A stretch of 64,000 bases of DNA from Malacoraja senta (taxonomy: Eukaryota), in NCBI GenBank assembly GCA_038087875.1, contig CM075981.1, forward strand, positions 15,810,001 through 15,874,000, in the 5' to 3' direction. Both the position numbers and the translations under genes were made by a program. The notes beneath the pieces were generated by a model. The model did not search any database. It was not told the origin of the DNA and was given only the letters and a program-made list of their open reading frames with translations. Positions 1,653 through 64,000 of this stretch are shown piece after piece; position 1 is the first letter of the stretch, and each line of letters begins with the position of its first letter.

Positions 1653-1688
1653 CTGCATCCTGCACATTCTTCTTTAACATTTCAACTT
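1653..1688 (-). CDS. Micro-exon E16 (36 nt), [12 protein letters not shown]
   Basis: gtttctttctttcag|AAGTTGAAATGTTAAAGAAGAATGTGCAGGATGCAG|gtaagc. Confidence 0.85.
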
Positions 1689-4600
1689 CTGAAAGAAAGA
1701 AACGGCGAAATATGTGAGAAAAATACATGGTTCCTGCCAACAAAAGGGGCAGTTTAGAAAATAACGACGCATAAGACTGCCATTAAGGCAACCCAGAGCA
1801 ATATTAAAATAAAATGAAAATAATTATGAAGCGTTGGTAAAACGAGCAAGGATAGATTAAGAACAAAAGAAGCATTGAATACATTATTCCGTACTCAAAT
1901 AAGTATTTTAGGAAGGAGAACTATATTCCACCCAGATGAAACTGGAAGGACATATGGAATAAAGACACTATGACTGCATGGATGGAAGACGGCCATTTCA
2001 TTGATATGAATGCCAATGTATATATTTAAGAGAGAGAGATCGAAAACGAATGCTTCGGCTTCATGCGGCGCACGCATCAATTGGTAGACAATAATTTATC
2101 TAGGCCGTTAAAATGGGAAGGTAAGTTCAATTTTGTTTATACTTTTATCGATTCGTACATGCCTGGCTCTTGCTGGTGCACATTTAAATACCGTATGAAA
2201 ATAGGTACTGTTTGTGCGACTGAAATGAAGCATAAAAATCAATACACACCTTTTCCATTTTTGCCGAGTTTCAATTCTAGGTCAAACACGAAATATAATG
2301 AAATAAATAGAGGGAAGTGTTGACCAACATGTTATCATGTTGCTGGTCTCAGTCGAAGAAGGAGTGCTTATTTATTTATATCTTCCACAGTGTTAATTCA
2401 CATTGTCTGTTTTCAAAGTGAAAATCACGGATTACGTAACACGCAGGGGAACTAGGTCCACTCAATTGTGAAGAGAAACACACAAAGTTCGCTGTATCCA
2501 GTTGAAGTGAAAGCGGTGGCAAGCGGTAATGCCAAAGATGAATGGAAACGGGGATAACTGATTTATGGAGCCATTGATTAAGCGCCGTGGAGGAAAATAA
2601 ATAGTTAAGCCATATGTACAGATCTGCACCTTTCTCAATATCTAATTGGAAAGTTGTCTAGGACTATCGAAATATATATATAATCTGCATAAAAACCTGT
2701 TCTTTTATATATTTTAGAGATTACGATGACGATCTCATAGTTCGTGCAACCACTTTGCATACAGCCTATTTCAGGCTCACGAATAAAAATAAAACGTGTA
2801 CGAAGGAGCTGCAGATGCTGGTTTACACCGAATATAGACACAAAATCCTGGTGAAACAACGGGACACAGCATCTCTGGATGGAAGGAATGGGTGACGTTT
2901 CGGGTCGAGACCGTTCTTCAGACTCAGTCAATGAGAGGGAACCTCAAAGATAAGGGAATCTAAGAGATCAAAACAGTTGAAATTCAAGGTTAATGAAAAA
3001 ATAGATCAATGTTAGCTAGGAGAAGGTGACAACAAAGCAATCAGAGATAACATCTAATCAGGGGGATATTCAGAGTGGTTGGAGAACTGGTTAGGGGTGG
3101 GATGGAGAGAGAGGGAAAGGAATCATTACTTGAAGTTAGAAAAAGCAGCATTCATATTGCTGGTGAGTAAGCCGCCCAAGCAAGTCTTCCAATTTGCGCT
3201 GTGCCTCACTCTGACAATGGAGAAAGCCCAGGACAGAAGGGTCAGTGTGGGAATGGGAGGTGACGTTAAAGTATTTAGTAACCGGGATATCAAGTAGTTT
3301 TAGGAGGACTGAGCGGAGTTGTTCCTCAAAACGATCACCGAGCCTGCGCTTGGTCTCACCGATATATTGGAGTTCACACTTGGGAAAGGGGATAAAGTAG
3401 ATGAAGTTGGAAGAGATGCAAGAGAACCTCTGCGTTACATGTAAAGACTATCGCAGTCCTTGGACGGTGTCGAAGGAGTAGGTATAGGTACACGTGTTGC
3501 GTCTCGTGCGTTTGCATGTGAAAGTGCTGCGGAGAGGCTGGTTTCGGTGGGAATGACAAGTTAACCAGGGATTTGCAGAGGGAACGGTCTCTGCGGAAAG
3601 CGAAAAGGAGGTGGAAATGGGAAGATGCGGCTAGTGGTGAGATCCCGTTGGAGCTATCGAACATGTCGCAGGATTACGTGGTGTATGCGACGGCTGATGG
3701 GGTGAAAGTTGAGGGCTAGGGGGACTCTGTCCCTGCATCGAGGGAAGGAGAACAATAGTGGAGCTGCGGGATATCGAGGAGGCGCTGGTGAGGGCCTCAT
3801 CTATGATGGAAGAGCGGAACCCCCGTTACCTAAATAATGAAGATTAAATTACATACCCCCTTTTACGCCGCATCTGCTCCCAAGGTTGGGTGTTCCATGC
3901 CAGGGCATGTCCTGTTTTGGAACATCTAACCTTGGGCGCAGATGTGGCGTAGACGGAGGAATTCGAGGTAGTGGTAGAGTCTTTTCAAGTGGCAGGATTT
4001 GAAAGAAATGTAGTCTAGATAGATGTGTGAGGCAGTAGGTTTCTAATAGATGTCAGCCGAAAGTCTATCTCTTGTGATGGAGACGTTGAGATCAAGTAAC
4101 GGCAGGGAAAAGTCGGAGATGGTCAAAGTAAATTTGAGTTCTGGGTGGAAATTAGTAGGAAATTGAAAATAAACCGGTGAGTTCCGCATGGGTGCATGAG
4201 GTAGCCCTTCGTATAGAAACAATGAGTTTAACTTATTTACGGCCTCATGTTGTACCAATTGGGAGTGTAAATAAGTTAATTACATATTTCTGTGCCAAAT
4301 TAGGTTAGTAGTATACCCGTTAATCAACCCAATTAAAATAAACTGGCACTGATTGAGAACTTGAGATTTTGTCACATATATTTGGAGATGATGCCAATGT
4401 GCTCGTTTTACCAAATCGTACAATTTTAACTTTGCAACAAATCCTCACATCTGTGAGGGATTGTAAGTGATTGAGCATCAACAAATTTCGTCTACACTCG
4501 ATGGAGCTACATGTGCTTATTGCACTGATATCTAGTAAATGTCAGCAGTTATCTTTTTTAGTGTTCTACTCAAATTTGTAAAATTGTGTAATAAAGAAAA

Positions 4601-10600: not shown

Positions 10601-13600
10601 TTTGGTGCAAGAACAGGAAGGGAGATTATTATCTGAGCGGTGTCTGATTGGGGAAAGGGGAGGTGCAAAGGGACCTGGATGTGCTTGTTCATCAGCCACT
10701 GTAGGTAAGCATGCAGGTACAGCATGCAGTGAAGAAAGCTAATGGCATTTTGGCCTCCATTGCCAGCGGATTTGAGCTTAGGAGTAAGGACGTCGTACGG
10801 CAGCTGTACAGGGCCCTGGTGAGACCGGATCTCGAGTATTGTCTGTAATTTTGGTCTCCTAATTTGACGAAGGACATTATTGATATTGCGGGAGTGCAGC
10901 GCAGGTTCAGCAGCTTAATTCCCGGGAGGGCGGGACTGACATACGATGAAAGAATGGGTGGACTGGGCTTGTATTCACTGGATTTTAGATGGATGAGAGG
11001 CGATCTTATCGGAACATAAAATGTCTTAAATTATTGGATAGGCAAGATTTAGGAAAAATGTTCCCGATGTTGGGAGAGTCCAAAACCAGGGATCACAGTT
11101 TACGAATAAGGGGTGGGCCATTTAGGATTGAGACGAGGAAAAAGCATTCACCCAGAGAGTTGTGAATCTGTGGAATTCTCTGCCACAGAATGCAGTGGAG
11201 GTCAATTCATTGGATGTTTTCAAGATAGTTTGATTTAGCTCGTAGGGCTAAAGGAATTAAGGACTATGGGGAACAAGCAGGAACGGGGAACTGATTTTAG
11301 ATGAGCAGCCATATTAAATGGCGGTGTTGGCTCTTAGGACCGAATGGCATCCTCCTGCACTTATGTTTCTATGCTTCTATGTTTCAATTTCAAGTAATTA
11401 TTACCCTTCCTTCTTGAATCCGGAAACCCATGACTAAAGCTAGCGACTTTTGCTTACGATGTTCCACTTCCGTTAACATTTTCGTAGTTGGCGATTGAGC
11501 GTACTTGTCTGAAAGGACGTCCTCAACACTTTGCTGGAATTCCTTCAGTAAAAGAGCTATCTGAATCTGTCCGTCAGTTGTTGTAAGATACCAGATGTAC
11601 ATTGCGACGTCAGTTCTGACAGAACTGCGACTGGGCTTTATTACGCGTCGCTTAGGTCGCGCCTGCGGATATGATTTTTTTGGTATCTAGTGAATCTCTA
11701 CATCTATTCCTTTCAAGGAAATCCAAGCCCTTGTCTTCAGTTTTGCAGCCTGTGTAGCGTGCTCGAAATTGGATTTGATCACAGCTCCATAAGTTTGCAA
11801 CGATCATACACCCATTTGTTCAGCAGTTCACATGAAAATATAATTCTTCGTTTTGAATTCAAATTGCAACAGAATATTGAAGCATACACTTTCTGAGGTG
11901 TATGCAGTTTTTTATCAATGTTGTGCTGCGTTTATATTCCTATCGTCCCAATTAGCAATCGTACGTTACAAAAAGCGTCGGTATCAAATAACTTTGAAAT
12001 TTAGTATAACATTGCATGTTAAGGAAGGAATAAAATATATTCTCCTGCTTTAACGGATCCATACAATTCCTGAGAAATTGCTCAAGGCCATATGTCGTAT
12101 GTGCTTACCCATATCTAGCTTTTGATTAACGCGGAAAAGGCGTGTTATTATTCGTCAGGTTATTGGCAGCTTCAAATAATAGACCTACTTTCTGAAACAT
12201 TATTTTTTTTAACCCACGTGTGCAATCGGTGTCCATTCAGCATTTTTTTTATTATCCAGGGGAAGTGGTAAGTCGCACATCACACATTTTGAATTACAAC
12301 AGCAGTACTTTGCCTGTCATTTCCATTGGGGTGAATTATCTTTTCAACATGTTTCCTGCTAACCTGTATCCAGCAGATTATCTTTTAGTGTTGCAGCTTC
12401 TAAAAGAAACAAGTGTCGAAATATTTGAGATAAATAAATTGATAACGCTATCAAAACTGGCACATGTTCATCGACGACGCAGAGGTCTGCCATCAAAACA
12501 ACAAAGAGGAATGTTAAAATTAAGGAAAATGATGATGAACATTGGTAAAATGAGAAACGACAAACTAAGAACAAAATAAGAACCGATAATCAATTATCGC
12601 GCACCTAGCAAAGTATGTTAGAAAGTGAAAGGTAAACGGCGATGGTTAACCAGAAGGTACAATGGAAAATTAAGGGGAATGACTACGCTTTAGGAAGATG
12701 GAATTTAATCTATCTATCTATATACTTTTAAAACTCTGTGGCTGTCGTCCGTCCGTGCGGCTGTACGTCCAACGTTCTGCTTGCCGCGCGGCCTTTGACA
12801 CCGCCCCGCGCCCACACAGCGCGCGGAAAGGCCCATATTTTTGACCATTTCCAAAGAGATTACATTTATCTTTACGAAAACCCACTCCTGATTAAATTCT
12901 GTCCTGTTTATGTACACGTTTTTTTTTAATAAAATCCATCCCCCCCAACCCCAATGTGATTTTCTCCGATTGTCTCCGATTTTCTCCGAAAACGACGCCA
13001 TCTTTTTTTTCCCGATTTTCTCCGAAAACGACGCCATCTTTTTTTCGCCGATTTTCTCCGATTTTTTTCGGAAAACGACGCCATCTTTTTTTCCGCAGAT
13101 TTGCACCCCGGGATCTGAAGCACGTTCGGGAACAACACCCCGGGGTGTCAAGCACTTTCGGGGACCAGACCCAACGGGTCTGCACTTGGTCTAGTATACC
13201 TATAAAACTCTCATCTTGTGCTCTTCCGATTTGTGTTGTTTTTACATTTTGCGCAAAAACTGTTCCTGATAGCGCTACGATTTTTCGCCAACGTACTTGT
13301 CATTCTCCTCTGCTGCAAGTGCAGCAAGTTCTGTTCCAATGGATGTAATAGCACAAAAGTTATGAAGGTTTAACCATCGCAAAAACCGCCCCTTCCGGCA
13401 CCCGCTGTCAATCACCGACGGCGAGGAGAATATACCTAAAGGAGCGGAGCGAGCAGAGTGTGTTGAGCGAGTGCGGAGTGCGCAGCGTGCGTAGTACGCA
13501 ACGTGTGGAGAGAGCAGCGTGCGGAGTGAGCTGCGTGCGGCGTGCTTCTGCGGCGTCCAGCACGACGAGCCGAGAGCCGCTGACTGGAACCGGCAGCCAG

Positions 13601-16600
13601 TGAATAAAGCCGGAGCCGGACCGGGAGGCATTGAGTGAGACCGAAAGCTGATGGTGCAGGGTAAGCAGAGTGCGGGGTGAGGACAGTGCGAGCTGCGTCT
13701 GCGACGACCACAACACACCCTCCACAGCAACCACACCCTCCCCGCCCACACACCCCACCCTCTCACCCCCCCGCTACCACCCCACTAACCCACCCGCCCT
13801 CCCCACATGAACCCACTCCCCCACACCCCACCCCCCACCCCCATTCCCCACACATCCCCAACCACACCACTCCTCCCCACACACCCTCCCCCACACCCCC
13901 ACACCCTCGCTTCCCCACAACCCCTCCCCACCCGCCCTCTCCCACCCTCTCCCCACACCCCGCGATCCCCGACAAACCCCCTCCCCACCAAACACACACC
14001 CTCCCCCACACACACCCCTCCCCCACACCACCCCACAGCCCCCTCCACACACATCCCCGCCACAACCCCTCTTTCCCACACCCTCTCTCCCCCGCACCCC
14101 CACATCCTTCTTTCCCCACGCCCCACGCCCCACGCCCCACGCCCCACGGCCCACTCCCCCATACCCCCCTGCCCACCCCCTCCCCCACACCCACTCCACC
14201 CCCCTCACCACACCTCCCCTCCCCATACCTCCCCCTTCACATCCAACACAAACCCTCCCCATCCCCAGTCCCCCCACCCCCTACCACACATCCACCTCCC
14301 CACACCCCCTCTCTCTCACACCCCTCCTCCCCAACCCCCCGACCCTTCCCCCAACCGCCCTCCCACTCCCCCACAACCCCCTCCCCACACACCCCTCCCG
14401 CACAACCCACCGTCCCCAACACACCCCCACGTCCCACCCCCCACTACCCCTCCTCCGCACACACCGACACCCCCCATAGACCACGCTCCCGCTCCCCCCC
14501 ACACATCCCTCCCCCACACTCACCCGCTCCCCCACACATCCCCCTCTCCCACGGGGAGAGTTTCAGGCGTGTTGCGGGGGGGGGGGCGTCCTGCAGCTGG
14601 GGACGGGACGACTCCAAGCGGGGGCATGTGTGGGGGGGGGGGAGCGTTTGCAGCGTGGAGGGGACGGTTTCATGTGGGGGCTGTAGGGGGCCGGTGTGCG
14701 AGGGTCTTACAGCGGAAGGGAACGACAGCGCTGCCCCCTATAGGCCCCGCCTGAAGCCGTCCCCAAGCCCCGGGTGCGGGATACTCCCCTCTCCCTCACC
14801 GGTCCCCGGCAACTCCCGTTTAAAGAGCGCAACACGAGAAGCAACACATATACAGGGTGAGTGGTGGAATATTGCTTTGGGGGAACAAGTTGCGTTGGGG
14901 GAACAGTTGAGTGGTGGAATATAGCTTTGGGGAATGGGTTGTGTTGGGGGACCAGGCCTCCCGTGTGACTTGGAACCAACGGGTCTCACTTAGTCTTGTT
15001 TATTATAACAGCCTGTGGAATATTTGAAATAGTACGAAAACCAATGCTTATGGTTTGAAGAACACGTATACATGGATAGGCAATAAAGGCTCTTCCCCTG
15101 CTAATATCAGGGGAAATCAATATTGTATTGATACTTTTATCGGTGCGTGCGTGTTCTGCTATCACTGGAGCACATCGAGTTTCAGCAGAAGTATTATTTG
15201 TTTGATGAAATAAATCTCTGTGCTCACCTTTTTCTTTTTTGCCGAGATGTAATTCTAGGTGGAACACGAAACATGATGAAACATGAATTAAGAACATATG
15301 TTTAGAAGGAGATTTAGCCTCAGCCGAAGAAGCTCTGATCATTTATTCTTGTATTTCCCAGAATTCATTAAGGTAGTCCACTTTCGAAGTGGACATTACC
15401 CGAGGAGCATAAGGGGTCATATATGATACAGGACTAGATTATCCACTCAATTGTGAAGGCCAACATCCAAGGTAGGCTGTATCCATTTGAGGTGAGAGCG
15501 GTGGCCGCGAGAAGAGGACCAGTTCTGTTAAATGCTCATCATATGCAAAGCCACTCATTTTTGAAATCATTCTTGTAAACCGCCTATGGACCCTATCCAG
15601 AGCTAGCACCTCCTTCCTCGGATATGGGGCCCAAATTTTCGCACAGTGCTCTAAATGCAGACAGGCCCGTGCGTTATAGAGACGCAGCATTACTTCTCTG
15701 TTTTTGTATTCCAGGCCTCTTGATATCAATGGCTTTCAGCGTAGGTTCACGAGATTGATCCCTGGGATGGCGGGATTGTCATATGAGGAAAGATTGAAAA
15801 GACTAGGCTTGAATTCATTGGAGTTTAGAAGGATGAGGGGGGATCTTATAGAAACATATACAATTATAAAAGGACTGGACCAGTTAGATGCAGGAAAAAT
15901 GTTCCCAATGATGGGCGAGTCCAGAACCAGGGGCCACAGACTTAGAATAAAGGGTAGGCCATTTAAGACTGAGGTGAGAAAAAACGTTTTCACCCAGAGA
16001 GTTGTGAATTTGTGGAATTCCATGCCACAGAGGGCAATGGAGGCCAAATCACAGGATGGATTTAAGAGAGAGGTAGATAGAGCTCTAGGGGGCTAGTGCA
16101 ATCAAGGGATATGGGGAGAAGGCAGGTACGGATTATTGATTGGGGTCGATCAGCCATGATCACAATGAATGGTGGTGTTTCCTCGAATGGCCGAATGGCA
16201 TCCTCCTGCATCTATTTTCTATGTTTCTATGTTTCTAAATGCTAGCATTGAATTTCCCTTTCTTACTACCGATTCGTCTTGTAAATTAACATGTTGGCAG
16301 TCCTGAACCATCACTCCCAAGTCCCTATGCCCATCCGATTTCTGAATTCTCTCTCCATTTAGAAAACAACCTATGCCTTTATTATAGCCGTAGACTATTT
16401 TATAAATGGGGAGAGAATCGAGAAATCGGAGGTGCAAAGGGACTTTGGAGTGCTGGTTCAGGACTGCCAAAAGTTAATTTGCAAGTGGAATCGGTATTGA
16501 GAAAGGCCAATTCAATTGTTGCATTTATATCAAGAGGACTATAATACAAAATCAGAGAAATGAGTGGGGATCATATGGAAACGTACACAATTATAAAAGG

Positions 16601-43600: not shown

Positions 43601-46600
43601 TGACAATGTCGCTTCCCGGAATGTTGAAGTAAACTGACCCTTTTTTGAACTCACCAGAATCGAGAAGACTGCTTCTACATTTTTCAAGTTCTAAGATGCA
43701 AAGGCATGAGACGGTTAGCACTGCGCGAAACGAATGGAAGCAAAAAATGATTCAAATATAGAGAGCTTAGGATACTACATTCGTTGTGGAATGCTGGGGA
43801 AATCTGCATCAATTCAACCTCGGACTTAGGGCACATTTCAGAGCGAAATATGGTTCAACAAAAATGGGCCCTAGACTAGAAATATCGATCATGCGGGGAT
43901 ATTATTGAAGATGGGTTATTGGCATTCTTGATGCACATAACAATGGTTATTCCCTGGGGCCAGACGAAGTACATCATATGACTTTACGAGAATCAAGGAA
44001 ATATATGGCTGGGATGTGGAAGAAACTTGTGGATGCTCCTTAAACACGGGTGAGGTAATGAAAGACTGAAAGGTGTTTGACTGTGTCTTTATTTAAGAAA
44101 GGCTGCAAACAGACGTCGGCGACACATAGTTCACTTGACCGCCGTGGTGGATATTTTATTTGAGGGGATTCCCAGATAAAGGATTCAACTGTGTTTTGAA
44201 AATCAAGGATTGATTTAAGATTGTCGATGGGATATTTTTTTCCCCCAAATTAATTTTGTTGTTGACATTTTTGCCACCTCCAAAGAGATCGCACCATGTT
44301 ATATCTTCATAACTCCACAACTTTCTGCATTTCGTTTAGAGACCGAACCCTCCGCAACTCCCCGGTTCACCCATCCCTTCCCAGCCAAACCTCACACTCC
44401 CCGGGAACTTTCCCCTCCAACAGCAGTAGATGCGATATATTTCCTTATACATTTCCCCCTGAAACCATCCAGGGTCCCCGACAGTCCATTCAAGTCTGGC
44501 AGAGTTTCACTTGTACATCATCTAATCTCATCCACCGAACCCGTTGTTCACGGAGTGGGCTCCTATATATCGGCGAGACCAACGGCGAGATTGGGCGATA
44601 GTTTCGCTGAAAACTTATGCTCAGTCCGCCTTGGCCTACGAGATATCCAGGTTGCCAAACATGTTATCTCCCCTTCCCATTTAAATTCTGACCTTTTTCT
44701 CCTCGCCTACCTTCACTGTCAGAGACCGCACTCAAATTGGTGGAACTGCACCTCATATTTCGCTTGGGCACCTTACTACCCTGAAGGGAACAATCAGCCA
44801 GATCAGGTGTAAGCTCTGCCCCCGTGCATCAGATTGCGCAGCATTCTCTCATTTCTCTACGGTAGGTTAGTCTGTAATTCAGCTTGTTCTCTATAGACCG
44901 CATATTCGCCAATATGATTCAGGGGAGCGGAGACCTGAAGCCACGCGGTTTCTCCCAGTTTTCCCGCGTTTTATTAAAGTCTCTTGGATGCATCCCAGAA
45001 ATTCGTCTAAACATCCGCATAATTCTGTAAACTGTCTACATATCTGTCCCTCTATCTTCCCTTGCTAGTGGGGGTCAATAGTACAACCCCATTGGTGCAC
45101 ACACCTTTCTGATTTCTAAGGTCACCCGTGCCGCTTCGGTGGACATACACGGTGGCTATGTAGCTCCCGTACATGTGTACCATAGATCCAAGCATCAACC
45201 TAGCGTCTGTTCATTTGCTTTCTCCACAATACCATTGCGTTGAAATATGCACACGTTTAGTGTGTCCATGTTGCTTCTCATCTCATTGCTTATCCTAACT
45301 TCCCATCACTCTTTCCAATTTATGACCGACTACACGCTGAGGAGAGGGTGGATACGAACTATTTTCCTTGGAACGAACGAAGCTGAAGAATGGCCACGTA
45401 CAGATTCACAAAATCACGAACGACATACATATGCTGTATGATAACCGTCTTTTCTCAGGGCAGGGGAATCTCAAAACGGCATAAGATTAAGTTGAGAGAG
45501 GCTAGTTTTACGGGCGCGTTTATATTTCCATATAGGGAATGGTCGGTCCATGAAAGGAACATTTAACATAAAGCAGCTAAAGTTTCCATTTGTCATCGTC
45601 CGTGGACATTATAGCATTTGGTGTGCCCCAGGGTTCGATTCTGTGCACATTGTTGTCTGTCATCTATATCAATGATTTGGAAGATAACGTACAAATCATA
45701 ATTAGTACGCTCGCAGATGACACTGAAGTTAGTGCCATAGTAAATAGTGGTAACAATTGCATCATGATCTTGATTGGTTGGGCAAGTGGGCCGAGGAATG
45801 TTTGATGGGATTTAATATAACGTGCGATGTATTTATTGTATGTTGGGACAGCTAACCAGACCAGTAATGAAATGTGGGCTCTGGAGAGTGTTGAAGAGCA
45901 CAGTAATCTACGAGTCCAGGTACAGTACGTAGTTCCTTGAAAGTGGCGTCACAGATAAATAGGCCAATCAGGAAGGCTTTCGGTACATTGTTCTTCATCA
46001 TGACGAGAGAGGTTGCGAGGGTATATTACAGTTGTACAGGCACTAGTAATATTAAATTTAGAGTAATGTTTTGGTCTCATTGTTATAGTGACGATATTAT
46101 TAAGATTGAAATGGTGCAGAGACGTTCCCAGGATTCGAAGGACTGAGATGTGGGGATGAACGATGAGGGGCGATCTTCTGGAGGGGCATAGGATCATTAG
46201 CGGAAAAGTACGGGTAANNNNNNNNNNNNNNNNNNNNNNNNNNNNNNNNNNNNNNNNNNNNNNNNNNNNNNNNNNNNNNNNNNNNNNNNNNNNNNNNNNN
46301 NNNNNNNNNNNNNNNNNNNNNNNNNNNNNNNNNNNNNNNNNNNNNNNNNNNNNNNNNNNNNNNNNNNNCTATATCTGCTTTTGATCCGCCGAACTCTGCA
46401 GCTGCTCTATATCCCACTGTATCACCTGACAGCATTCCTCGCTGACTGCAATTCCGTCAACTTTAATGTCATCAGCAAACGTACTCACGAACCCATCTGC
46501 ACTTAAGTTTTAGTAAATGTTTTTGTATATTACAAACAGCAGCAGTCCCCGCACAGAGCCATGCGGAACCATATTGGACACAGACCTCCAGTCAGAATAT

Positions 46601-49600: not shown

Positions 49601-52600
49601 AGGACTAGAGGTGTGAGTTATAGGGAGAGGTTGAGTATGCTGGGTATCTATTGCATGGAGCGCAGGAGGATGAGGGGCGCTCTTATAGAGGTGTACAAAA
49701 TCATGAGAGGAATAGATCGAGTAGATGCACAGAATCTCTTGCCCAGATTAGGCGAATTGCGGACCTGAGGACATAGGTTCAAGGTCATAGGGAAAATATT
49801 TAATAGGAAGCCGGGTGGTGGATATGTGGAACAAGCTGCCAAAGGAGGCAGTTGAGGCTGGGACTATCCCATCCTTTAAGAAAAAGTTAGACAGGTGCAT
49901 GGACATGACAGGTTTGGTGGGATATAGACCAAGCGCAGGCAAGAGGGATTAGTGTAGCTGGGGCATTATTGGCCGGTGTGTGCGTTGGGCCGAAGGGCCT
50001 GGTTCCGCACGCTTTCATTCTCTCACTCTAAGTATTGTAGTAACTGAGCGAGTCAAGCGGCACATCTGGAGGACGTGCATGGGCGACATTTTGGATCTAG
50101 ACCCTTCTTAAGACCGACCCCTGTAGAAATCTTTTTCTTGCAGACTCTCGTGGGAAACAGCACAAAAGTTGTAAAGCCAGCGGTCAGAGGTAGTCCAAAG
50201 TAGTTAAGTATGAATAATTTTCTCCTTACCGCCTTTAATAAAAGCGACCATTTGTAGTTTTATTATATCAAAAATACTTTTTAAAAAACACACAGGTATA
50301 ACAATTTGAGCAACTGACCACGTTAATGGTTCGTAGGTTATGTACCACTTGGATAGCATTATGACAGAGGTGGATCCAATATTGTATCTGGCAGATGGAG
50401 CTGTTGACCAACGCGGATTTGCTGATTTTCAAAAAGTTCGGATATATCAAATGAATTAGCATTACAGCGCAGGGAATAGGCACCCGTCCATAAGAACCAG
50501 AACCCTGGCATTTCCTTACCTTTATCTTTGCCGCTCAGCTTTCTTTCTAGAGACAAGATAGGGCTGTGTAAGTCAATGGAGAACAATCTACCGGAGAAGT
50601 AAACTATCGCATCAGTGGTTTCACCATCCTATGTTTTGCAACGCGAGCGTGGATATTAATTGGAAATAGCAGACATGGATTATATTTTAATGACATTCGC
50701 TCGCCATTGTATTAACATATTCTAACAAGGTCTAAACGTTATAAATTTACCGTTGATTCCAGAATCGTTTTGTAACTCATATGTATTCGATTAAAATTAA
50801 TGCCGACGGGTGAAAAATGAAACATATGCGTTGAACATTTGTGAAGATTCCGCTGGTCATAATTTATGAAAATAATATGATACCGATCGATGGAGCTTCC
50901 AACCTTCATTGCAGCGCCACGATAACGGAATTTTGAATGTGCAACATTCGGCGCAAATGAACGAATACCATACACCGAATATGTTTCTCTAACACAATGA
51001 TATCAATGCATATTGATTTTAAAGCGTTAGATTTTCAAAGATGTATATACTCACGAATATCTTCACATTTTTCTTTCAGTTGTTGCAGTTCTGACAAAAG
51101 GAAAGGGAAATCGAGAACGATTATTTTTCTGTGGCACTCTGGACATATTGCCTGAGCTTCAATCGACTGACCATAAAGGGAAGCCAATGCTGCGAGAACG
51201 ATGAAGTAAGCGTACATATAATGATGCTGATCCAACGTAGTGTAGTATACATTAGCAGTCGGGCGGAAATGATCAATGGTGTAAAACCTCATAGGTATAT
51301 GCATTAAAACAGTATTTATCCAACCCGTTCGCATACCGCAGTACATTTTAGTAAAACGTTTTGAAGACTATTCATAGACAGAACAAGGTGACCCGCAGTG
51401 AACTGTCTGAACAGGCTCCATTCACAATCGAACGATTGTTTTTGTAGGCAAAACATACAACTAAGAGGGAACGGCTGTTGATTCTGAGTCTGAAATTATT
51501 CGGAGAATTATATCGTACATGGCCAAAACACGAAACTATTTCATTCCTTGCATAGCTACAGGGGAACGATTTCGCCGATAATGTTTTGCTTATTATCAAC
51601 GTCTCAGATAAAGAGATGAAAAAGATCGTTAATAAAGTTATTTGCAGAAATAGTACTAATTGTTTGTGTAACTGAATGTGTAGTGACTATATATTGGTCT
51701 AGAAAATCATTTCATCAACGAGAATTCTGCTCAAAAAGGCCAAAACAAAAATAAAAATAAAGGATGATGTTAAGTTTGCAAATATTAATAACTCTTAGTA
51801 CGTATATGTTTCCGGTGCTAAAGCTGGTTTACAAAATTATCTGTTATGTAGTTACTGTGGTGTTAATACAAAATAAAACGCTAAATATAATGGCTCTGCT
51901 TCTGAATATACCTCCTAATTTCTGAAAGGAAAAAGCACGCATGTTATTTTCGCGGGTCTGTGATCTCTGTAGTAAGTCAGCAATCTATCGAAGTACGCTG
52001 AAATTATTTCAGCTGGTTAAAATTGACTCGTAATTTATTAGTCTTGAGAGCTGGTATAAATGTTGTGAAGTTCTCATCTGGAACGGGACTACATTCAGGG
52101 AATTAAGACAGTCGCATCTTTAGCGCGAAAAAGTGAATGTCGAAGGTTCAAAGTGATCATCCGAAACGATTGTTGAAAAATCCGACCAGATAACTTGATG
52201 AGGCAGATTCTATTCAATTTCTAGTAGTGGCCTAATCAACAAAATGTAATGATCCTGCATGTGGAGCAGTGGGCCGCTCAGAGGGTCAATCATTATATTG
52301 TTGGGCTACAAGTATCGCCACCGGTCCTCCGATTGGAGGATGGGGCTCAGTTGGTTACAGCGAAGAATTTGAATCCCAATCATTCTCTGTCCCCCATGCA
52401 GATAGACACATACAAACAATATCAAATAATGTGCAACCTGGTCGGAGATGTTTGCTGAGAGAAGAGGCTGTAAACCTAGGTCATGTCTTACGTGTGTGGG
52501 AGTTGGTATAAACGATTCCACTGTAATAATTGGAAGAGATCCTGAAAGTAGTCAACAGTAATCCGATGCTAATTTATCCCTCATTGAATTTGATCAAATG

Positions 52601-58600: not shown

Positions 58601-60840
58601 TATAGGAGCAGGGAGGTTCTACTGCAGTTGTACAGGATCTTGGTGAGACCACACCTGGAGTATTGCGTACAGTTTTGGTCTTCAAATCTGAGGAAGTACA
58701 TTATAGCCACAGAGGGAGTGCAGAGAAGGTTCACCAGACTGATTCCTGGGGTGTCAGGACTTTCATATGAAGAAAGACTGGATAGAATTGGCTTATACTC
58801 GCTAGAATTTAGGAGATTGAGAGGGGATCTTATAGAAACGTACAAAATTCTTATGGGGTTGGACAGGCTAGATGTAGGAAGATTGTTCCCGATGTTGGGG
58901 AAGTCCAGGACAAGGGATCACAGCTTAAGGATAAGGGGGAAATCCTTTAAGACCGAGATGAGATTTTTTTTTTCACACAGAGAGTGGCGAATGTCTGGAA
59001 TTCTCTGCCACTGAGGGTAGTTGAGGCCAGTTCATTGGCTATATTTAAGAGGGAGTTAGATGCGGCCCTTGTGGCTAAAGGGATCAGGGGGGTATGAAGA
59101 GAAGGCAGGTACGGGATACTGAGTTGGATTATCAGCCATGATCATATTGAATGGCGGTGCAGGCTCGAAGGGCCGAATGGCCTACTCCTGCACCTATTTT
59201 CTATGTATCTATGTATCTATAATGGCAGGATAATAACCGACCCCTGAAGTTAGGAATGAGAAGGACCTAATTATCGATTCCAGCAAGCAAGGCGAAATAC
59301 ATGACTAATCAGCATCCACAGCGCCGAAGTGGAATTGTGTAAATGGCTGAGGGCTTCGCATTCGTTGGCTTTAATATGACCAAACATCTGTCTTGAACCA
59401 ACCACATAAATGCGATTGCCAACAAGGGACAACAACTTCGCTACTTGCTGGGAAGATTGTGGAAAAATCGGCAAATTTACAATTATTCTTACAAACGTCC
59501 ATAGAAACAATGCTGTCGAGTTGCTACGTGTTTTGGTAAGGGGTATGCAATGCCCAAGACCGCTAGACACTGTCGAGAATTGAAGATGAAGTTGCTCAGT
59601 CCATCACCGAGAACAAACTTCCCACCATTGACTCCATCTACATTTCACGCTGCCTCTCAAACGCAGATAATATAATGAAAGACTTGTCTCACCCGGTCAT
59701 TCCTCCTTCTCACTGCTCCGCTCCCGCAAAGGGTACAGTAGATTGGACACGCGCACCATCAAACTCCGGAAATTCGTCTTGCCCTCTGTTACGAAGCCTC
59801 TTGTGTCCTTCCAAAAGGGCACAATTCCTCTCTACTGGATTGCGGACAGTGGAATTCCTCCATGAACCGCTGCGCTACAATGCTGAGAACTATATTCTGC
59901 TCTCCATATCTTCCTCTATCTATCTATTGTACTTGGATTTTCTTGACTGTATTGATGTATAGTCTGATATGATCTGTTTGGACAGCATGGGAAACCAAGC
60001 TCTTCACTGTACCTCGGCATAGATGACAATAGTAAACCTAAACCTAAATTGAAAACGCATCAGTTGTACATTCGGCATGAATTGTAAACCGACAGTACAT
60101 TTGGTTTATCAACGAATTGACACGGCGGTCCAGCTGATGTTTGCCGTTTTCCATCTGAGGGAGTCAATCGGCGAATCCAAAACTCCACACCAAGCCTGGG
60201 ATAATGCAGTTAGCAGTTCAAAATGATAATAGAGTTGTAAGTCTTTTGAGCAGTAATGTTCAGTAAGGAGGTGAGGAGGTGCCTGGTGAACTCACTGTGG
60301 TGGATGTTAATTTGTGTTTATTGTGTGTTTTGTTATTTATTATTATATGTATGACTGCAGGCAACGAAATTTCGTTCAGACCGAAACCTGTCCTATCCAT
60401 GTAACTGTCCAACTCTTTCTTAAACAATGGGATTGTCCCAGCCTCATTTAACTCCTCTGGCAGCTTGTTCCATACACCCACCACCCTCTATGTGAAAAAG
60501 TTACCCCTCAGATTCCTATTAAATATGTTCCTCTTCTCCTTGAGCCTATGTCCTCTGGTCCTCGATACCCCTAGTCTGGGTAAAAGACTGTAGATCGAGC
60601 CGATCTATTCCTGTCATGATTTTGTATACATCTATAATATCTCCCCTTATCCTCCTACGCTCCATGGAATAGAGACCCAGCCTACTAAACCTCTCCCTAG
60701 AGCTCACACCCTCTGGTCCTGGCAACATCCTCGTAAATCTTTTGTGAACCCTTTCAATATACCAGGAACTAATACGTTTGTCAATTTACAACGAACCTGG
60801 AGTGTACTCTTACCTTTTATTTTGCTGGTCAAAGTACTTT
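1653..60840 (-). CDS. Partial multi-exon gene: 16 alternating 27/36-nt phase-1 micro-exons encoding a 21-aa-repeat coiled coil (start and stop outside window)
   Basis: Spliced frame of 504 nt with no stops: [168 protein letters not shown]. Every exon has an AG acceptor (mostly pyrimidine-rich) and a GT donor. Confidence 0.85.
2250..2276 (-). CDS. Micro-exon E15 (27 nt), ELKLGKNGK
   Basis: tcgtgtttgacctag|AATTGAAACTCGGCAAAAATGGAAAAG|gtgtgt. Confidence 0.82.
2795..4210 (-). mobile_element. Degenerate Penelope-like retroelement
   Basis: RT remnant [35 protein letters not shown]. Reverse-complement homology to the GIY-YIG element at 33720-34980. Terminal hammerhead-like motif at 2891-2924. Confidence 0.85.
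4884..5860 (-). mobile_element. 5'-truncated CR1 LINE (RT C-terminus, 3'UTR, microsatellite tail)
   Basis: [26 protein letters not shown] and [14 protein letters not shown]; repeated ccatataa-type tail at 4884-4920. Confidence 0.92.
5950..11385 (+). mobile_element. Degenerate near-full-length CR1 LINE, its 5'UTR interrupted by a foldback element
   Basis: ORF1 remnant at 8298, APE remnant, RT motifs [13 protein letters not shown] and [15 protein letters not shown], and a 3' (tttctatg)n tail at ~11365-11385. Assigning 5950-6107 to the 5'UTR is inference. Confidence 0.85.
6108..8127. mobile_element. ~2-kb palindromic (foldback) non-autonomous DNA-transposon-like element with CT/GA low-complexity arms
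   Basis: 6108-~7007 is the reverse complement of ~7070-8127 (ggggccgac...gtcggcgcc) around a ~60-bp spacer. It is flanked on both sides by ACGT and has subterminal CCGAA-containing repeats. Confidence 0.85.
12364..12399 (-). CDS. Micro-exon E14 (36 nt), [12 protein letters not shown]
   Basis: cttgtttcttttag|AAGCTGCAACACTAAAAGATAATCTGCTGGATACAG|gttagc. Confidence 0.83.
12709..13194 (+). mobile_element. Short non-autonomous Helitron (probably nested in the 5' end of the next one)
   Basis: 5' a|TCTATCTATCTATATAC; 3' hairpin CAGACCC-AAC-GGGTCTG (13166-13182), then CTAG|t. Internal ~35-bp tandem repeats (ccgattttctccgaaaacgacgccatc). Confidence 0.8.
13195..14998 (+). mobile_element. Non-autonomous Helitron with C/A-rich low-complexity interior
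   Basis: 5' tatacctataaaactctc; degenerate 3' hairpin ggaaccaacgggtctc followed by acttagtCTTG|t. Ends are homologous to 42189-43427. Confidence 0.75.
15228..15254 (-). CDS. Micro-exon E13 (27 nt), ELHLGKKEK
   Basis: tcgtgttccacctag|AATTACATCTCGGCAAAAAAGAAAAAG|gtgagc. Confidence 0.85.
15510..18825. mobile_element. Cluster of nested CR1 fragments on both strands (+ 3' ends at ~15735-16235, ~16390-16955, ~16960-17535; - fragments at ~15510-15730, ~16236-16385, ~17540-17670, ~18440-18825)
   Basis: RT C-terminal motifs in the ORF track ([48 protein letters not shown]) and (tttctatg)n tails. Confidence 0.85.
17680..18440 (-). mobile_element. GC-rich non-autonomous retroposon (SINE-like) with LINE-type 3' tail
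   Basis: Minus-strand tail ...ctcgtatgttgcaaaacatacttggctAATAAAacatgcttatgtttatg. The 3' body is homologous to 32316-33125 and 37846-38840. It interrupts a minus-strand CR1. Confidence 0.6.
20173..20208 (-). CDS. Micro-exon E12 (36 nt), [12 protein letters not shown]
   Basis: ttccgtttattttag|AAGTTGGGATACTAAAAGACAATCTGCATGATACAG|gtcagc. Confidence 0.83.
20532..20945 (+). mobile_element. CR1 3' fragment
   Basis: [18 protein letters not shown] and 3'UTR gggccaaagggcctgtttccacactgtatcact. Confidence 0.85.
21184..21210 (-). CDS. Micro-exon E11 (27 nt), ELKFDKKVK
   Basis: tcgtgtttcacgtag|AACTAAAATTCGACAAAAAAGTGAAAG|gtgagc. Confidence 0.85.
21795..22030 (+). mobile_element. Penelope-like 3'-terminal fragment with hammerhead-like motif
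   Basis: cccagcggtatgaacattg...cagtCTGAAGAagggtctcgagccGAAAcgtg; homologous to 34730-34950. Confidence 0.8.
22662..22697 (-). CDS. Micro-exon E10 (36 nt), [12 protein letters not shown]
   Basis: ttttcgctctttcag|ATATAGCAAAGCTGAAAGACCAAATCGCGGATGTTG|gtgagg. Confidence 0.85.
22740..22899. other. Assembly gap (160 N)
   Basis: Run of n between exons E9 and E10. Confidence 1.
22955..27040 (-). mobile_element. Young near-full-length CR1 LINE with internal deletions; sister of 54592-59220
   Basis: ORF1 N-terminus (CSGC...CARC) fused by deletion to the inter-ORF/APE region. APE and RT ORFs at 24596-25453, 24132-24599 and 23395-23970; (catagata)n tail. Confidence 0.95.
26611..27040 (-). repeat. 90-bp tandem monomers in CR1 5'UTR (~4.8 copies)
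   Basis: Units start at 26611, 26701, 26791, 26881 and 26971 (ccttt(t/g)taactc...gccccgcgct). Confidence 0.95.
27865..27891 (-). CDS. Micro-exon E9 (27 nt), EQRLSSAEL
   Basis: tacgcttttttacag|AACAAAGATTAAGCAGTGCGGAACTAA|gtgagt. Confidence 0.82.
28156..30540 (-). mobile_element. Older CR1 fragment (~28156-28840 and ~30067-30540) interrupted by a younger CR1
   Basis: RT remnants on both sides join as acaaGGACATccgggtctcg. Confidence 0.85.
28841..30066 (-). mobile_element. Young 5'-truncated CR1 with open 371-aa RT/C-terminal ORF
   Basis: [27 protein letters not shown] and KFADDT; (catagaaa)n tail; GGACAT duplicated at 28838-28843 and 30065-30070. Confidence 0.95.
31645..31680 (-). CDS. Micro-exon E8 (36 nt), [12 protein letters not shown]
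   Basis: ttatttccctcccgcag|AACTGGAAATAATGAAAAAAAATGTCCATGATCGAG|gtaaat. Confidence 0.85.
32316..33125 (-). mobile_element. GC-rich non-autonomous retroposon with L2-like (TTAC)n tail
   Basis: Minus-strand tail atgtaaagaacgttggtttcaacgcaagttgatatatacgtgctacataAATAAAaattacttacttac; body collinear with 38160-38770. Confidence 0.65.
33720..35280 (+). mobile_element. Penelope-like retroelement (RT C-terminus plus GIY-YIG endonuclease), degenerate, with partly repeated terminus
   Basis: FDDCIG...[32 protein letters not shown] and [38 protein letters not shown]. The terminal segment recurs at ~34850-34950 and ~35195-35280. Confidence 0.92.
35511..35537 (-). CDS. Micro-exon E7 (27 nt), EAKRFSNVR
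   Basis: tttttatgtcattttag|AGGCAAAGCGTTTCAGCAATGTCAGAG|gtgaga. Found where the alternation predicted a missing 27-mer; its peptide is the most divergent. Confidence 0.75.
35982..36226. mobile_element. Possible solo LTR
   Basis: TGTTG...CAACA termini and an internal aatatataa followed by a CT-rich tract. Flanks atta/atga would be an imperfect 4-bp TSD. Confidence 0.35.
36570..36880 (+). mobile_element. Penelope-derived terminal fragment with mutated hammerhead-like core
   Basis: agtCTGAAGAagggtctcgacccGAGAcgtcaccc...ccagcattttgtgtcta; homologous to the reverse complement of 2800-3130. Confidence 0.75.
37140..37210. repeat. (TG/CG)n compound microsatellite
   Basis: tgtgtgcgtgtgtttgtgtgcgcgcgcgcatacgtgcgtgtgtgt. 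Confidence 0.9.
37386..37716. mobile_element. PIF/Harbinger-like MITE with right terminus eroded
   Basis: taa|AGGGCCTGTCCCAC. atacgcgacctttacaggcgactgcc is inverted as ggtaggcgccggtaaaggtcgcgtat; internal cacgacc repeats. Confidence 0.6.
37846..38840 (-). mobile_element. GC-rich non-autonomous retroposon with L2-like tail
   Basis: Minus-strand head ggaggagccatcttgggg; tail gcaaggcgtccttgagagtctttgaaaggcgcccataagt. Confidence 0.65.
39015..39050 (-). CDS. Micro-exon E6 (36 nt), [12 protein letters not shown]
   Basis: gcgtcttccttgcag|AGATTCACGAAATAAAGAAAGATAATCTTGCATCCG|gtgagg. Confidence 0.82.
39672..40570 (+). mobile_element. 5'-truncated CR1
   Basis: [28 protein letters not shown]; (actctatg)n tail. 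Confidence 0.9.
41668..41780 (+). mobile_element. CR1 3'UTR fragment, ending ~12 bp from the E5 donor
   Basis: gttgggccgaagggcctatttccgcagtatcactataactctatgac. Confidence 0.8.
41793..41819 (-). CDS. Micro-exon E5 (27 nt), VENLNNKEK
   Basis: gtttgtataattgcaattag|TGGAAAACCTGAACAATAAAGAGAAAG|gtgagt. The polypyrimidine tract is weaker here. Confidence 0.78.
42189..43427 (-). mobile_element. Non-autonomous Helitron with C-rich interior
   Basis: Minus strand: a|TCTATCTATCTATACATAACTAAAGCTC ... hairpin gggacac-aac-gggtccc, then acttagtCCAG|t. Homologous to 13195-14998. Confidence 0.75.
43655..43690 (-). CDS. Micro-exon E4 (36 nt), [12 protein letters not shown]
   Basis: gcctttgcatcttag|AACTTGAAAAATGTAGAAGCAGTCTTCTCGATTCTG|gtgagt. 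Confidence 0.85.
44265..44785 (+). mobile_element. Penelope-like GIY-YIG fragment
   Basis: [26 protein letters not shown]. Confidence 0.85.
44790..50030. mobile_element. Old CR1 fragments on both strands (e.g. - ~46420-47735; + ~45600-46217 and ~47745-50030)
   Basis: [57 protein letters not shown] and [10 protein letters not shown]. Confidence 0.85.
46218..46368. other. Assembly gap (151 N)
   Basis: Run of n between exons E3 and E4. Confidence 1.
50520..50546 (-). CDS. Micro-exon E3 (27 nt), QRKLSGKDK
   Basis: cctatcttgtctctag|AAAGAAAGCTGAGCGGCAAAGATAAAG|gtaagg. Confidence 0.85.
51055..51090 (-). CDS. Micro-exon E2 (36 nt), [12 protein letters not shown]
   Basis: ccctttccttttgtcag|AACTGCAACAACTGAAAGAAAAATGTGAAGATATTC|gtgagt. 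Confidence 0.85.
52886..53489. mobile_element. PIF/Harbinger-like MITE with GC-rich interior
   Basis: taa|AGGCCTGTCTCAC ... GTAAGACAGAGCCT|tta; the terminus resembles that at 37386. Confidence 0.6.
53830..60048 (+). mobile_element. Old Rex-Babar/L2-type LINE (~53830-54591 and ~59221-60048) split by a young CR1
   Basis: RT remnant cacaagtttgcagataaaaccactgtcgtgggcc (KFAD.TTVVG) resumes after the CR1; tail gatgacaatagtaaacctaaacctaaa. Confidence 0.7.
54592..59220 (+). mobile_element. Young full-length CR1-clade LINE (5'UTR ~90-bp monomers, ORF1 Zn-finger plus SGNH esterase, ORF2 APE-RT) with several stops/frameshifts
   Basis: ORF1 [22 protein letters not shown] and [14 protein letters not shown]2 GITETWL, MGDFN, SDHN and KFADDT. 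(tatctatg)n tail; ATAA at both junctions (54588-54591, 59219-59222). Confidence 0.96.
60293..60385 (+). mobile_element. Short 3' fragment of the GC-rich non-autonomous retroposon family
   Basis: cactgtggtggatgttaatttgtgtttattgtgtgttttgtt matches the reverse complement of ~17760-17815. Confidence 0.5.
60387..60755 (-). mobile_element. CR1 3' fragment
   Basis: [32 protein letters not shown] and [10 protein letters not shown]. Confidence 0.85.
60814..60840 (-). CDS. Micro-exon E1 (27 nt), xSTLTSKIK
   Basis: gtgttcctattatcag|AAAGTACTTTGACCAGCAAAATAAAAG|gtaaga. The upstream intron resembles those of E11/E13/E15. Confidence 0.8.
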
Positions 60841-61209
60841 CTGATAATAGGAACACGGAAAATTTAAAAAAATAGATATATTTTGATTTGTTTCGGCATC
60901 CTTTGTCTTCAATATATTGATAGGTTAACTCCACAACAGTGATGAAGTGATTACGTTTGTCATCGAAAAGCAACAGCATTCATGTATATTTTTACCTGCC
61001 ACGAATGAGATCCATTTTAAGGGTGTTCACTGTACACCCAGCTTTCTTTGAAACTTAAAAAAATATATTTATCTTACTTCTGATATCTAGTTATTATTGA
61101 AACATTAATATAATTCCTCATTCCATATACATTTCCCGGTAAATCATTGCAGATAATCTCCAATGTGGTGAGATAAATTGAAGGGTTGTAAACTGAAAGG
61201 CCTCGATTA

Positions 61210-61720
61210 ACAATAGACAATAGGCAATAGTCAATATGTGCAGGAGTAGGCCATTCGGCCCTTCGAGCCAGCACCGCCATTCAATGTGATCATGGCTGAT
61301 CATCCCCAATCAGTACCCCGATCCTACCTTCGCCCCGTATGCCCTGTCTCCACTATTTTTAAGAGCACTATCTAGCTCTCTCTTGAAATCATCCAGAGAA
61401 TCTGCCTCCACCGCCCTAGGAGGCAGAGAATTCCACAGACTCACCAATCTCTGTGAGAAAAAGTGTTTCCTCGTCTCCGTTCAAATGGCTTACTCCTTAT
61501 TGTTAAACTGTGCCCCCTGGTTCTGGATTCCCCCAAAATCGGGAACAAACCCTGCCTCTAGCGTGTCCAAACCCTTAAAAGTCTTATATGTTTCAATGAG
61601 ACCATCTCTCATCCTTCTAAACTCCAGAGTGTACAAGCCCAGCTGCTCCATTCTCTCAGCATATGACAGCCCCGCCATCTCGGGAATTGACCTTGTAAAC
61701 CTACGCTGCACCGCCTCACT
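61210..61720 (-). mobile_element. CR1 3' fragment
   Basis: QRRFTRSIPEMAGLSYAERMEQLGLYTLEFRR; (caatag)n-type tail. Confidence 0.88.
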
Positions 61721-63610: not shown

Positions 63611-64000
63611 TTAATACATGCTCAGTACCACCTTGGATTTACAATAGTTAAGGCGGGCAGAAACAGGAAACCCTGGACGAGAAGATATTGAGATTCTGGT
63701 CGGAAGAAAGTGGGCATTGATGCACCCGTTGGTGTACCCAGGTGTACCCGTACGCCCATTTTGCCCATCTGTTTTCCTTCCTTCTGCACTCCCCTTTCCT
63801 CTGGTACAGGCAGCTGGGATCAAATGAATGCCCGGAGAGGAAAGGGAGTGCAGGAGGATGGAAATCAAATGGCAAAACGCGAGCACGAGAACGTTGATGT
63901 ATTCATATTAAGAGGAATCAAAGGAGATTTTCTGTTTTTTGATAAGGAATACAGTAACTAGCGGAGAGGGCGGGTTTAATGGGATGGAGGCAGCATTTCC

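What the first reader, a model, noticed from the sequence alone, without database searches (positions are those of the whole stretch)
1653..60840. Hidden micro-exon gene: strict 27/36-nt exon alternation builds a three-heptad coiled-coil repeat across ~59 kb of TE-filled introns
Seen in sequence: 16 minus-strand exons alternate 27, 36, 27, 36 with no exception. All are AG/GT bounded and phase 1-1, and they splice to 168 codons without a stop. In the 21-aa repeat, hydrophobic residues fall at positions 4 (L/F in 7 of 8), 11 (L/I/V/A in 8 of 8), 14 (L/I/M/C in 8 of 8) and 18 (7 of 8), which is a/d heptad spacing. Position 15 is K/R in 8 of 8 and position 20 is D in 7 of 8. Coding density is below 1%, so ORF and ab initio finders would likely miss it. 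Established knowledge: chicken BG genes and butyrophilins encode cytoplasmic heptad repeats in tiny exons, mostly 21 nt. Inference: this may be a BG/butyrophilin-like tail or another lineage-specific coiled-coil stalk using a 9+12-aa split that I do not recognise. Its identity cannot be fixed from this window.
Basis: partly seen in the sequence, partly recalled or inferred. Interest (0 to 1): 0.9.

Follow-up and report, generated by a model that had tools for sequence, protein, structure and literature searches.

The report
Sixteen tiny exons encoding a rod
Sixteen very short gene pieces, alternating 27 and 36 letters over 59 kb of this skate or ray genome, together spell a repetitive helical rod; the gene segment looks real, but it has no name yet and its expression could not be checked.

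Summary
All 16 minus-strand exons were recovered, from 60840-60814 to 1688-1653, and they alternate 27/36 nt. Every one is AG/GT-bounded and phase 1-1. They splice to 504 nt that are open in one frame only, and coding density is 0.85%.

Stricter tests are:
- A generic splice-signal filter keeps 16 candidates on the minus strand. Fifteen are claimed exons and one is an alternative donor of E7. It keeps 1 on the plus strand and 2.8±1.7 in shuffles.
- In leave-one-out profile searches, 15 of 16 exons are the best hit in the window.
- The 3.5-residue hydrophobic periodicity exceeds all 5000 shuffles.

E11-E16 are three tandem copies of a two-exon cassette whose introns still align.

Three related species carry E2 and E3. 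In the one whose differences are fully listed, both exons are intact, yet they change as fast as the introns.

No RNA evidence could be obtained. The spliced peptide has no reference, so it could not be given to the database or structure tools, and the gene's identity (BG/butyrophilin-like tail, receptor stalk or other rod) stays open.

The scan has noted similar micro-exon coiled-coil loci elsewhere in this genome (s1-195511, s1-179733, s1-195578).

The parts
60814..60840 (-). E1, 27-nt exon
   Evidence: Pyrimidine-rich acceptor and GTAAGA donor. Passes the strict splice filter. Top leave-one-out hit, though weak at E=0.32.
51055..51090 (-). E2, 36-nt exon
   Evidence: GTGAGT donor. Leave-one-out E=0.003. 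Intact in the relative whose differences are fully listed: AG/GT, length and frame all kept.
50520..50546 (-). E3, 27-nt exon
   Evidence: GTAAGG donor. Leave-one-out E=0.0025. The ortholog is intact in organism D, with one synonymous and one R>S change.
43655..43690 (-). E4, 36-nt exon
   Evidence: GTGAGT donor, passes the strict filter. Leave-one-out E=0.027.
41793..41819 (-). E5, 27-nt exon
   Evidence: GTGAGT donor, but the weakest acceptor of the set. It is the only exon that fails the strict filter. Leave-one-out E=0.012.
39015..39050 (-). E6, 36-nt exon
   Evidence: GTGAGG donor, passes the strict filter. Leave-one-out top hit, E=0.088.
35511..35537 (-). E7, 27-nt exon
   Evidence: GTGAGA donor. 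A weaker alternative donor 9 nt downstream would make it 36 nt. Leave-one-out top hit, E=0.53.
31645..31680 (-). E8, 36-nt exon
   Evidence: Strong acceptor, GTAAAT donor. Leave-one-out E=1e-5.
27865..27891 (-). E9, 27-nt exon (most divergent)
   Evidence: Good splice signals (GTGAGT), but not recovered by the leave-one-out profile. It fits by position, length, phase and open frame only.
22662..22697 (-). E10, 36-nt exon
   Evidence: GTGAGG donor. Leave-one-out E=0.0003. The N gap starts 42 nt upstream of its acceptor. Contigs of two relatives cover it.
21184..21210 (-). E11, 27-nt exon (cassette 6)
   Evidence: Paralog of E13 and E15, with alignable introns. Leave-one-out E=4e-7.
20173..20208 (-). 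E12, 36-nt exon (cassette 6)
   Evidence: Paralog of E14 and E16. Non-consensus donor GTCAGC.
15228..15254 (-). E13, 27-nt exon (cassette 7)
   Evidence: 81% identical to E15, against 64% for the flanks. Leave-one-out E=8e-7.
12364..12399 (-). E14, 36-nt exon (cassette 7)
   Evidence: 81% identical to E12, against 69% for the flanks. Non-consensus donor GTTAGC.
2250..2276 (-). E15, 27-nt exon (cassette 8)
   Evidence: Its unit aligns with the E11 unit over about 680 nt at 66% identity. Weak donor GTGTGT.
1653..1688 (-). E16, 36-nt exon (cassette 8)
   Evidence: Best acceptor of the set, GTAAGC donor. Leave-one-out E=3.5e-10.

Best explanation
This is the middle of a genuine protein-coding gene on the minus strand of a batoid (skate or ray) genome. 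A 63-nt unit encodes 21 residues, which is three heptads. That unit is split into a 27-nt and a 36-nt exon by phase-1 introns that sit in Glu codons (G|AA or G|AG in 12 of 15 junctions). The two-exon cassette multiplied by tandem segmental duplication to at least eight copies, and LINEs and other repeats later stretched the introns to 0.5-10 kb. The product is a proline-free helix rich in Lys, Glu and Leu, with a strict 3.5-residue hydrophobic period. It is most likely a coiled-coil rod or stalk segment about 25 nm long. That length is inferred from the usual 0.148 nm rise per residue. Because every exon is symmetric, any exon can be skipped in frame, but only skipping or duplicating a whole 27+36 pair keeps the heptad register. 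Rod length would therefore be adjustable in 21-residue steps. Shown here: exon anatomy, paralogy, periodicity, and an intact E2/E3 ortholog in one related species. Inferred: expression, oligomeric state, length tuning and the rest of the gene, which lies outside the window.
For: One open frame in 504 nt, while the other two frames each carry more than a dozen stops. A strict generic splice filter keeps 16 sites on the minus strand (15 claimed exons plus an alternative donor of E7), 1 on the plus strand and 2.8±1.7 in shuffles. Lengths 27 and 36 are enriched even with no ORF filter. In leave-one-out profile searches, 15 of 16 exons are the top non-training hit across both strands. E11-12, E13-14 and E15-16 are tandem duplicates. 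Their introns have diverged to 63-69% identity and carry many indels, yet all 12 splice dinucleotides, both exon lengths and the frame are intact. The five older cassettes share only 19-29% of residues, but columns 3, 10, 13 and 17 stay hydrophobic, column 14 stays K/R and column 19 stays D. Power at period 3.5 is 145, against a maximum of 94 in 5000 shuffles. Exons are 67% purine against 50% for the locus, which fits enhancer-dependent definition of micro-exons. Each of three related species has one contig that spans E2-E3. In the relative whose differences are fully listed, splice sites, lengths and frame are kept, the one change at a core Leu is synonymous, and a core C>V change moves towards the repeat consensus. 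Across the three relatives there are 8 indel events in the intron and none net in the exons.
Against: There is no transcript evidence. The only possible RNA data set of this species (X27, kind unknown) laid on repeats only, and 27-36-nt exons are nearly invisible to 31-mer indexing and to laying. Exon nucleotides are no more conserved than introns: 6 of 63 against 33 of 588 between species (p=0.26), and 69-81% against 63-69% among the young paralogs (not significant). Several splice signals are weak: the donors of E8, E12, E14 and E15 and the acceptor of E5. E9 is supported only by position, frame and splice sites. Two of the three d positions are polar (Lys/Asn, Ser/Thr), so the coiled coil may be weak or conditional. 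No start, end or globular domain of the gene lies in the window.
Confidence: 0.8

Rival explanations
1. Chance: a chain picked out of the hundreds of AG...GT 27- and 36-mers that any 64-kb sequence contains.
For: The loose criterion gives 286 candidates and chains of more than 100 on either strand.
Against: The strict splice filter gives 16 against 1 against 2.8±1.7. Lengths 27 and 36 are specifically enriched. Leave-one-out recovery is 15 of 16. Introns of three cassettes are alignable. The 3.5-residue periodicity is beyond all 5000 shuffles.
Confidence: 0.01
2. A relic: an exon array of a gene that has died or is dying, still well preserved but no longer expressed or selected.
For: Exons diverge as fast as introns, between species and between the young paralogs. 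Donors at E12, E14 and E15 are non-consensus. No RNA support was found.
Against: All 32 splice dinucleotides, all 16 lengths and 167 codons are intact, even though the introns of the older cassettes have diverged beyond alignment and those of the young ones by about 33% with many indels. Core columns are kept at 19-29% residue identity. The between-species changes spare or improve core positions.
Confidence: 0.12
3. Specific identity A: the cytoplasmic heptad tail of an Ig-superfamily, BG/butyrophilin-like membrane protein whose Ig-V and TM exons lie upstream of the window.
For: Chicken BG tails are built from 13-36 micro-exons with split codons that encode heptads (PMC4046983). All the introns here are phase 1, as is usual in Ig-superfamily genes (established knowledge). 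There are no N-glycosylation sequons and no conserved Cys.
Against: The exon sizes are 27/36, not 21/24. No Ig-V, TM or B30.2 exon is seen in the window. Sequence homology is untested.
Confidence: 0.2
4. Specific identity B: the extracellular neck of a type II receptor (C-type lectin or scavenger type, like the CD23 stalk), with the lectin exons downstream of the window.
For: The CD23 neck is a heptad-repeat trimeric coiled coil (PMC6791321). From memory, its 21-residue repeats each lie on their own exon. Phase 1-1 exons are typical of extracellular modules.
Against: No lectin-domain exon lies in the 1.6 kb downstream. There are no glycosylation sequons. The repeats are split 9+12 rather than one exon each. 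Homology is untested.
Confidence: 0.12

Closest known systems
Chicken BG genes (butyrophilin family): cytoplasmic tail exons
   Same: A long heptad-repeat helical tail encoded by a tandem array of many symmetric micro-exons with split codons. Exon number varies through duplication (PMC4046983).
   Different: In BG each exon is 21 (sometimes 24) nt, one heptad. Here a three-heptad unit is split into 27+36 nt in strict alternation. The introns here are kilobases long and hold repeats. No Ig-V or TM exon has been shown to be linked.
CD23 (FCER2) neck or stalk
   Same: A heptad-periodic stalk made of 21-residue repeats that forms a coiled coil (PMC6791321). That each repeat has its own exon is from memory.
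   Different: CD23 has 3-4 repeats, one exon each. Here there are at least 8 repeats, each split in two. No lectin domain has been found linked.
Other micro-exon coiled-coil loci noted by this scan in the same genome (s1-195511, s1-179733, s1-195578)
   Same: Arrays of symmetric micro-exons (36/27/18 nt) that encode 21- or 18-residue coiled-coil units. One was followed up and judged conserved in skates and electric rays.
   Different: They lie on other pieces of the assembly.

Membership tests
U2-type spliced coding exons | AG acceptor with polypyrimidine tract and GT donor close to GTRAGT | tested here: met
   16 of 16 are AG/GT. 15 of 16 pass a generic filter that keeps only 1 site on the plus strand. 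12 of 16 donors are GTRAG.
U2-type spliced coding exons | Transcripts that contain the exon-exon junctions | not testable with these tools
   No served RNA run of this species holds the locus. The possible RNA set X27 laid on repeats only.
Canonical left-handed coiled coil | 3.5-residue hydrophobic periodicity without helix breakers | tested here: met
   Power at period 3.5 is 145, against a shuffle mean of 11 and a maximum of 94 in 5000. Power at 3.6 is only 15. There are 0 Pro in 167 residues.
Canonical left-handed coiled coil | Both a and d core positions apolar | tested here: inconclusive
   The a positions (3, 10, 17) are apolar in 7-8 of 8 repeats. The d position 13 is apolar in 8 of 8, but d positions 6 (K/N) and 20 (S/T/R) are mostly polar. 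No structure prediction was possible.
BG/butyrophilin-type heptad tail | Each micro-exon is 21 (or 24) nt and encodes one heptad | tested here: not met
   The exons are 27 and 36 nt. Only the pair is a multiple of a heptad (PMC4046983).
BG/butyrophilin-type heptad tail | Codons split at every exon boundary (symmetric non-zero phase) | tested here: met
   All 15 internal junctions are phase 1.
BG/butyrophilin-type heptad tail | Ig-V and TM exons 5' of the array in the same gene, and B30.2 3' in butyrophilins | tested here: inconclusive
   No convincing further exon was found at 60841-64000 or 1-1652. The gene very likely runs beyond the window.
BG/butyrophilin-type heptad tail | Sequence homology of the tail to BG/BTN tails | not tested
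   The spliced peptide has no reference and was not typed, so no database search was made.
CD23-like type II receptor neck | C-type lectin domain exons 3' of the repeat exons | tested here: inconclusive
   Nothing lectin-like was found in the 1.6 kb downstream of E16. That stretch aligns with intron sequence of the paralogous cassettes.

The most novel reading that the evidence does not exclude
Batoid genomes carry a lineage-specific family of rod proteins written almost wholly in two-exon, 21-residue cassettes. Cassette number is set by tandem duplication and possibly by pairwise exon skipping, and it tunes rod length in register-preserving steps of about 3 nm. This would be a vertebrate molecular ruler built by a rule different from the one-heptad exons of chicken BG.
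Probability: 0.25. Interest if true: 0.75.

Novelty: new variant of a known kind. Interest (0 to 1): 0.55.

Why it matters
If expressed, this is one of the most fragmented coding regions known in a vertebrate. Coding density is under 1%, no exon exceeds 36 nt, and exon length encodes the register of the protein's repeat. It bears on three questions: how spliceosomes define long runs of micro-exons across kilobase introns full of repeats, how exon cassettes duplicate to lengthen structural proteins, and how many such genes ab initio annotation and k-mer based RNA look-ups miss. The case for importance is weakened by the lack of transcript evidence and of a gene identity. Similar loci had also already been noted in this genome.

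Tried and rejected
1. Profile search (nhmmer) of both exon types over both strands, looking for further or decayed copies in the long introns and the window ends. Nothing beyond the 16 was found.

2. Scan for other symmetric exons of 15-198 nt with good splice signals. No convincing extra exon was found. A 90-nt candidate at 1417-1328 lies in sequence that aligns with intron in the paralogous cassettes.

3. Rfam search of the whole window: no match.

4. RNA evidence. Two run searches and both read-laying runs produced no junction and no exon coverage in the one possible RNA data set. This is uninformative, because exons this short hold at most six 31-mers.

5. Cross-species constraint. I expected the exons to be slower than the introns, and they are not. 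Only structure-level constraint is visible: splice sites, length, frame and core residues.

6. Database homology, family scans and structure prediction of the spliced peptide were left out.

7. Literature searches for 27/36-nt exon arrays, and for skate micro-exon coiled coils, found nothing relevant.

8. Earlier-finding look-ups gave only titles of similar loci, with no gene name.

Full report
**Recovering the observation**

The window is 64 kb, 45% G+C, with a CpG observed/expected ratio of 0.70 and two N runs. I listed every AG-(27 or 36 nt)-GT segment of the minus strand that is stop-free at frame offset 2. Sixteen of them stand out by strong splice signals and related peptides. They run from 60840-60814 to 1688-1653, which are exactly the finding's limits.

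They alternate 27/36 nt without exception. Introns are 508 to 10087 nt. The spliced length is 504 nt. Offset 2 is open throughout, giving 167 whole codons plus a split codon at each end, while the other two frames each carry more than a dozen stops. All junctions are phase 1, and 12 of 15 junction codons are Glu. Coding density is 0.85%.

**Assembly gaps**

Gap 22740-22899 lies in the E9/E10 intron and begins 42 nt upstream of the E10 acceptor. Gap 46218-46368 lies in the E3/E4 intron. No exon or codon spans a gap, so the reading frame does not depend on them.

The 27-to-36 alternation and the strand are kept across both gaps, which mildly favours correct order and orientation. Continuity itself, and the absence of a hidden cassette, could not be tested.

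**Is it more than chance?**

It yields 286 candidates and an alternating chain of 116 on the minus strand, against 287 and 112 on the plus strand. The following tests do discriminate.

| Test | Minus strand | Controls |
|---|---|---|
| Generic splice filter (pyrimidine-rich acceptor, donor near GTRAGT), 27/36 nt, stop-free | 16 sites (15 claimed exons plus an alternative donor of E7) | 1 on the plus strand; 2.8±1.7, maximum 8, in 200 dinucleotide-preserving shuffles |
| Same splice filter with no ORF condition, counts by length | 7 sites at 27 nt and 10 at 36 nt | about 2 per length class otherwise |
| Leave-one-out nhmmer profiles (exon plus short flanks) | 15 of 16 left-out exons are the best non-training hit on either strand, ten of them at E ≤ 0.012 | E9 is not recovered |

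The chance reading is rejected.

**Anatomy and history**

- E11-E12, E13-E14 and E15-E16 are tandem copies of a two-exon cassette. Their introns still align over 500-680 nt at 63-70% identity, with many indels.
- Inside these copies the exons are 69-81% identical, have no indel, and keep all 12 splice dinucleotides.
- The five older cassettes have unalignable introns and share only 19-29% of residues. They still keep exact lengths, splice sites, the frame and the key columns.
- The introns hold LINE fragments with endonuclease and reverse-transcriptase domains, at about 22.9-26.4 kb and 28.9-30.1 kb on the minus strand and 55-59 kb on the plus strand.
- They also hold families present at enormous depth in the genomic runs and a repeat of about 340 nt present four times.
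- 'TE-filled introns' is therefore fair.

**The protein**

The 167 residues have 31 K, 24 L, 22 E and 13 D. There is no P, W or Y, there are two non-conserved C, and there is no N-X-S/T sequon.

Hydrophobicity has a sharp 3.5-residue period. Power is 145, against a shuffle mean of 11 and a maximum of 94 in 5000 shuffles. Power at 3.6 is only 15, which argues for a heptad coiled coil rather than an 11/3 amphipathic helix.

In heptad terms, a = columns 3, 10 and 17 (apolar in 7-8 of 8 repeats) and d = columns 6, 13 and 20. Only column 13 of the d positions is apolar. Columns 6 and 20 are K/N and S/T/R. Column 14 is K/R in 8 of 8 repeats and column 19 is D in 7 of 8.

I read this as a helical rod that probably pairs or trimerises, perhaps weakly. 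Its length, about 25 nm, is inferred from standard coiled-coil geometry. The exons are 67% purine and 46% A, against 50% and 27% for the locus. That composition suits purine-rich splicing enhancers, and this role is an inference.

**Reads**

- X1 is genomic DNA of the same species, with identical contigs.
- X27 is a small data set of the same study and may be RNA. It laid only on repeats and not on E2-E3 or E10-E12.
- This says little, because a 36-nt exon holds six 31-mers and a 27-nt exon holds none.
- There is therefore no transcript evidence either way.

**Relatives**

Runs of three related species (X6, X7, X9) each give one contig across the whole E2-E3 stretch, at about 6% divergence. 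Contigs of X6 and X7 also cover E10-E12.

For X6 the list of differences is complete:
- There are 6 substitutions in 63 exon nt against 33 in 588 other nt (Fisher p=0.26). The exons are not slower than the intron.
- Both exons keep AG/GT, length and frame.
- The changes are one synonymous change at a core Leu, Q>K, K>N and R>S at surface columns, and C>V at a core a position, which moves towards the repeat consensus.
- All three relatives share the same version of that site.
- Eight indel events fall in the intron across the three relatives, and none net in the exons.

This fits constraint on structure rather than on sequence, but the sample is tiny.

**Identity**

No further exon of the gene could be recognised at 60841-64000 or at 1-1652. 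The stretch downstream of E16 aligns with intron of the sister cassettes.

- The closest documented analogue is the chicken BG tail. It has 13-36 exons of 21 or 24 nt, each one heptad, with split codons (PMC4046983).
- The CD23 neck is another heptad stalk (PMC6791321). That it has one 21-residue repeat per exon is from my memory.
- The present 27+36 split of a three-heptad unit matches neither, and I found no paper that describes it.
- Notes of this scan list similar loci on other pieces of this genome. They are s1-195511 (followed up, and said to be conserved in skates and electric rays), s1-179733 (36/27/18-nt exons) and s1-195578.
- I could not compare sequences with those loci. They suggest a family rather than a one-off, and they are also my only basis for calling the genome batoid.

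**Verdict**

The best reading is a real coding micro-exon array that grew by cassette duplication and encodes a heptad rod (confidence 0.8). The main rival is a well-preserved relic (0.12). Whether it is a BG/butyrophilin-like tail, a receptor neck or some other rod remains open. It is a new variant of a known kind. Interest is moderate to high, held back by the missing transcript evidence and the missing gene context.

Noticed in passing
window 26398-27041 (minus-strand element) and 54592-55056 (plus-strand element): Two near full-length LINE copies in opposite orientation each begin with a tandem array of 90-nt units (4.8 and 3.2 copies, 93-95% matches) next to a 20-nt repeat. These lie upstream of the endonuclease and RT ORFs, and resemble the 5' monomer arrays of mouse L1.
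   Followed up: partly
window 6601-6967 and 7100-7573: A long (TC)n-rich tract is followed within about 130 nt by a (GA)n-rich tract, which makes a low-complexity inverted arrangement inside the 10-kb E14/E15 intron.
   Followed up: no
window 13731-14552: About 800 nt of C-rich CCCCACA-type low-complexity repeats in the E13/E14 intron. They produce spurious long ORFs on both strands.
   Followed up: no
window 60414-60757, 40086-40418, 49564-49883, 20534-20805: Four copies of an interspersed repeat of about 340 nt at 78-82% identity. It occurs in both orientations inside introns and is present at very high depth in all the genomic runs.
   Followed up: no
window 20310 and 21434: The same-species genomic run X1 shows both the reference base and the base fixed in two related species at about half depth each. 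These are likely heterozygous sites that carry the ancestral allele.
   Followed up: no
window 51064-51070 (inside E2): All three relatives share one version of 3 adjacent bases that differs from this genome. It can be written as three substitutions or as a 1-nt insertion plus a 1-nt deletion 6 nt apart. It may therefore be a compensated frameshift on this species' lineage, which turned N-V into K-C.
   Followed up: partly
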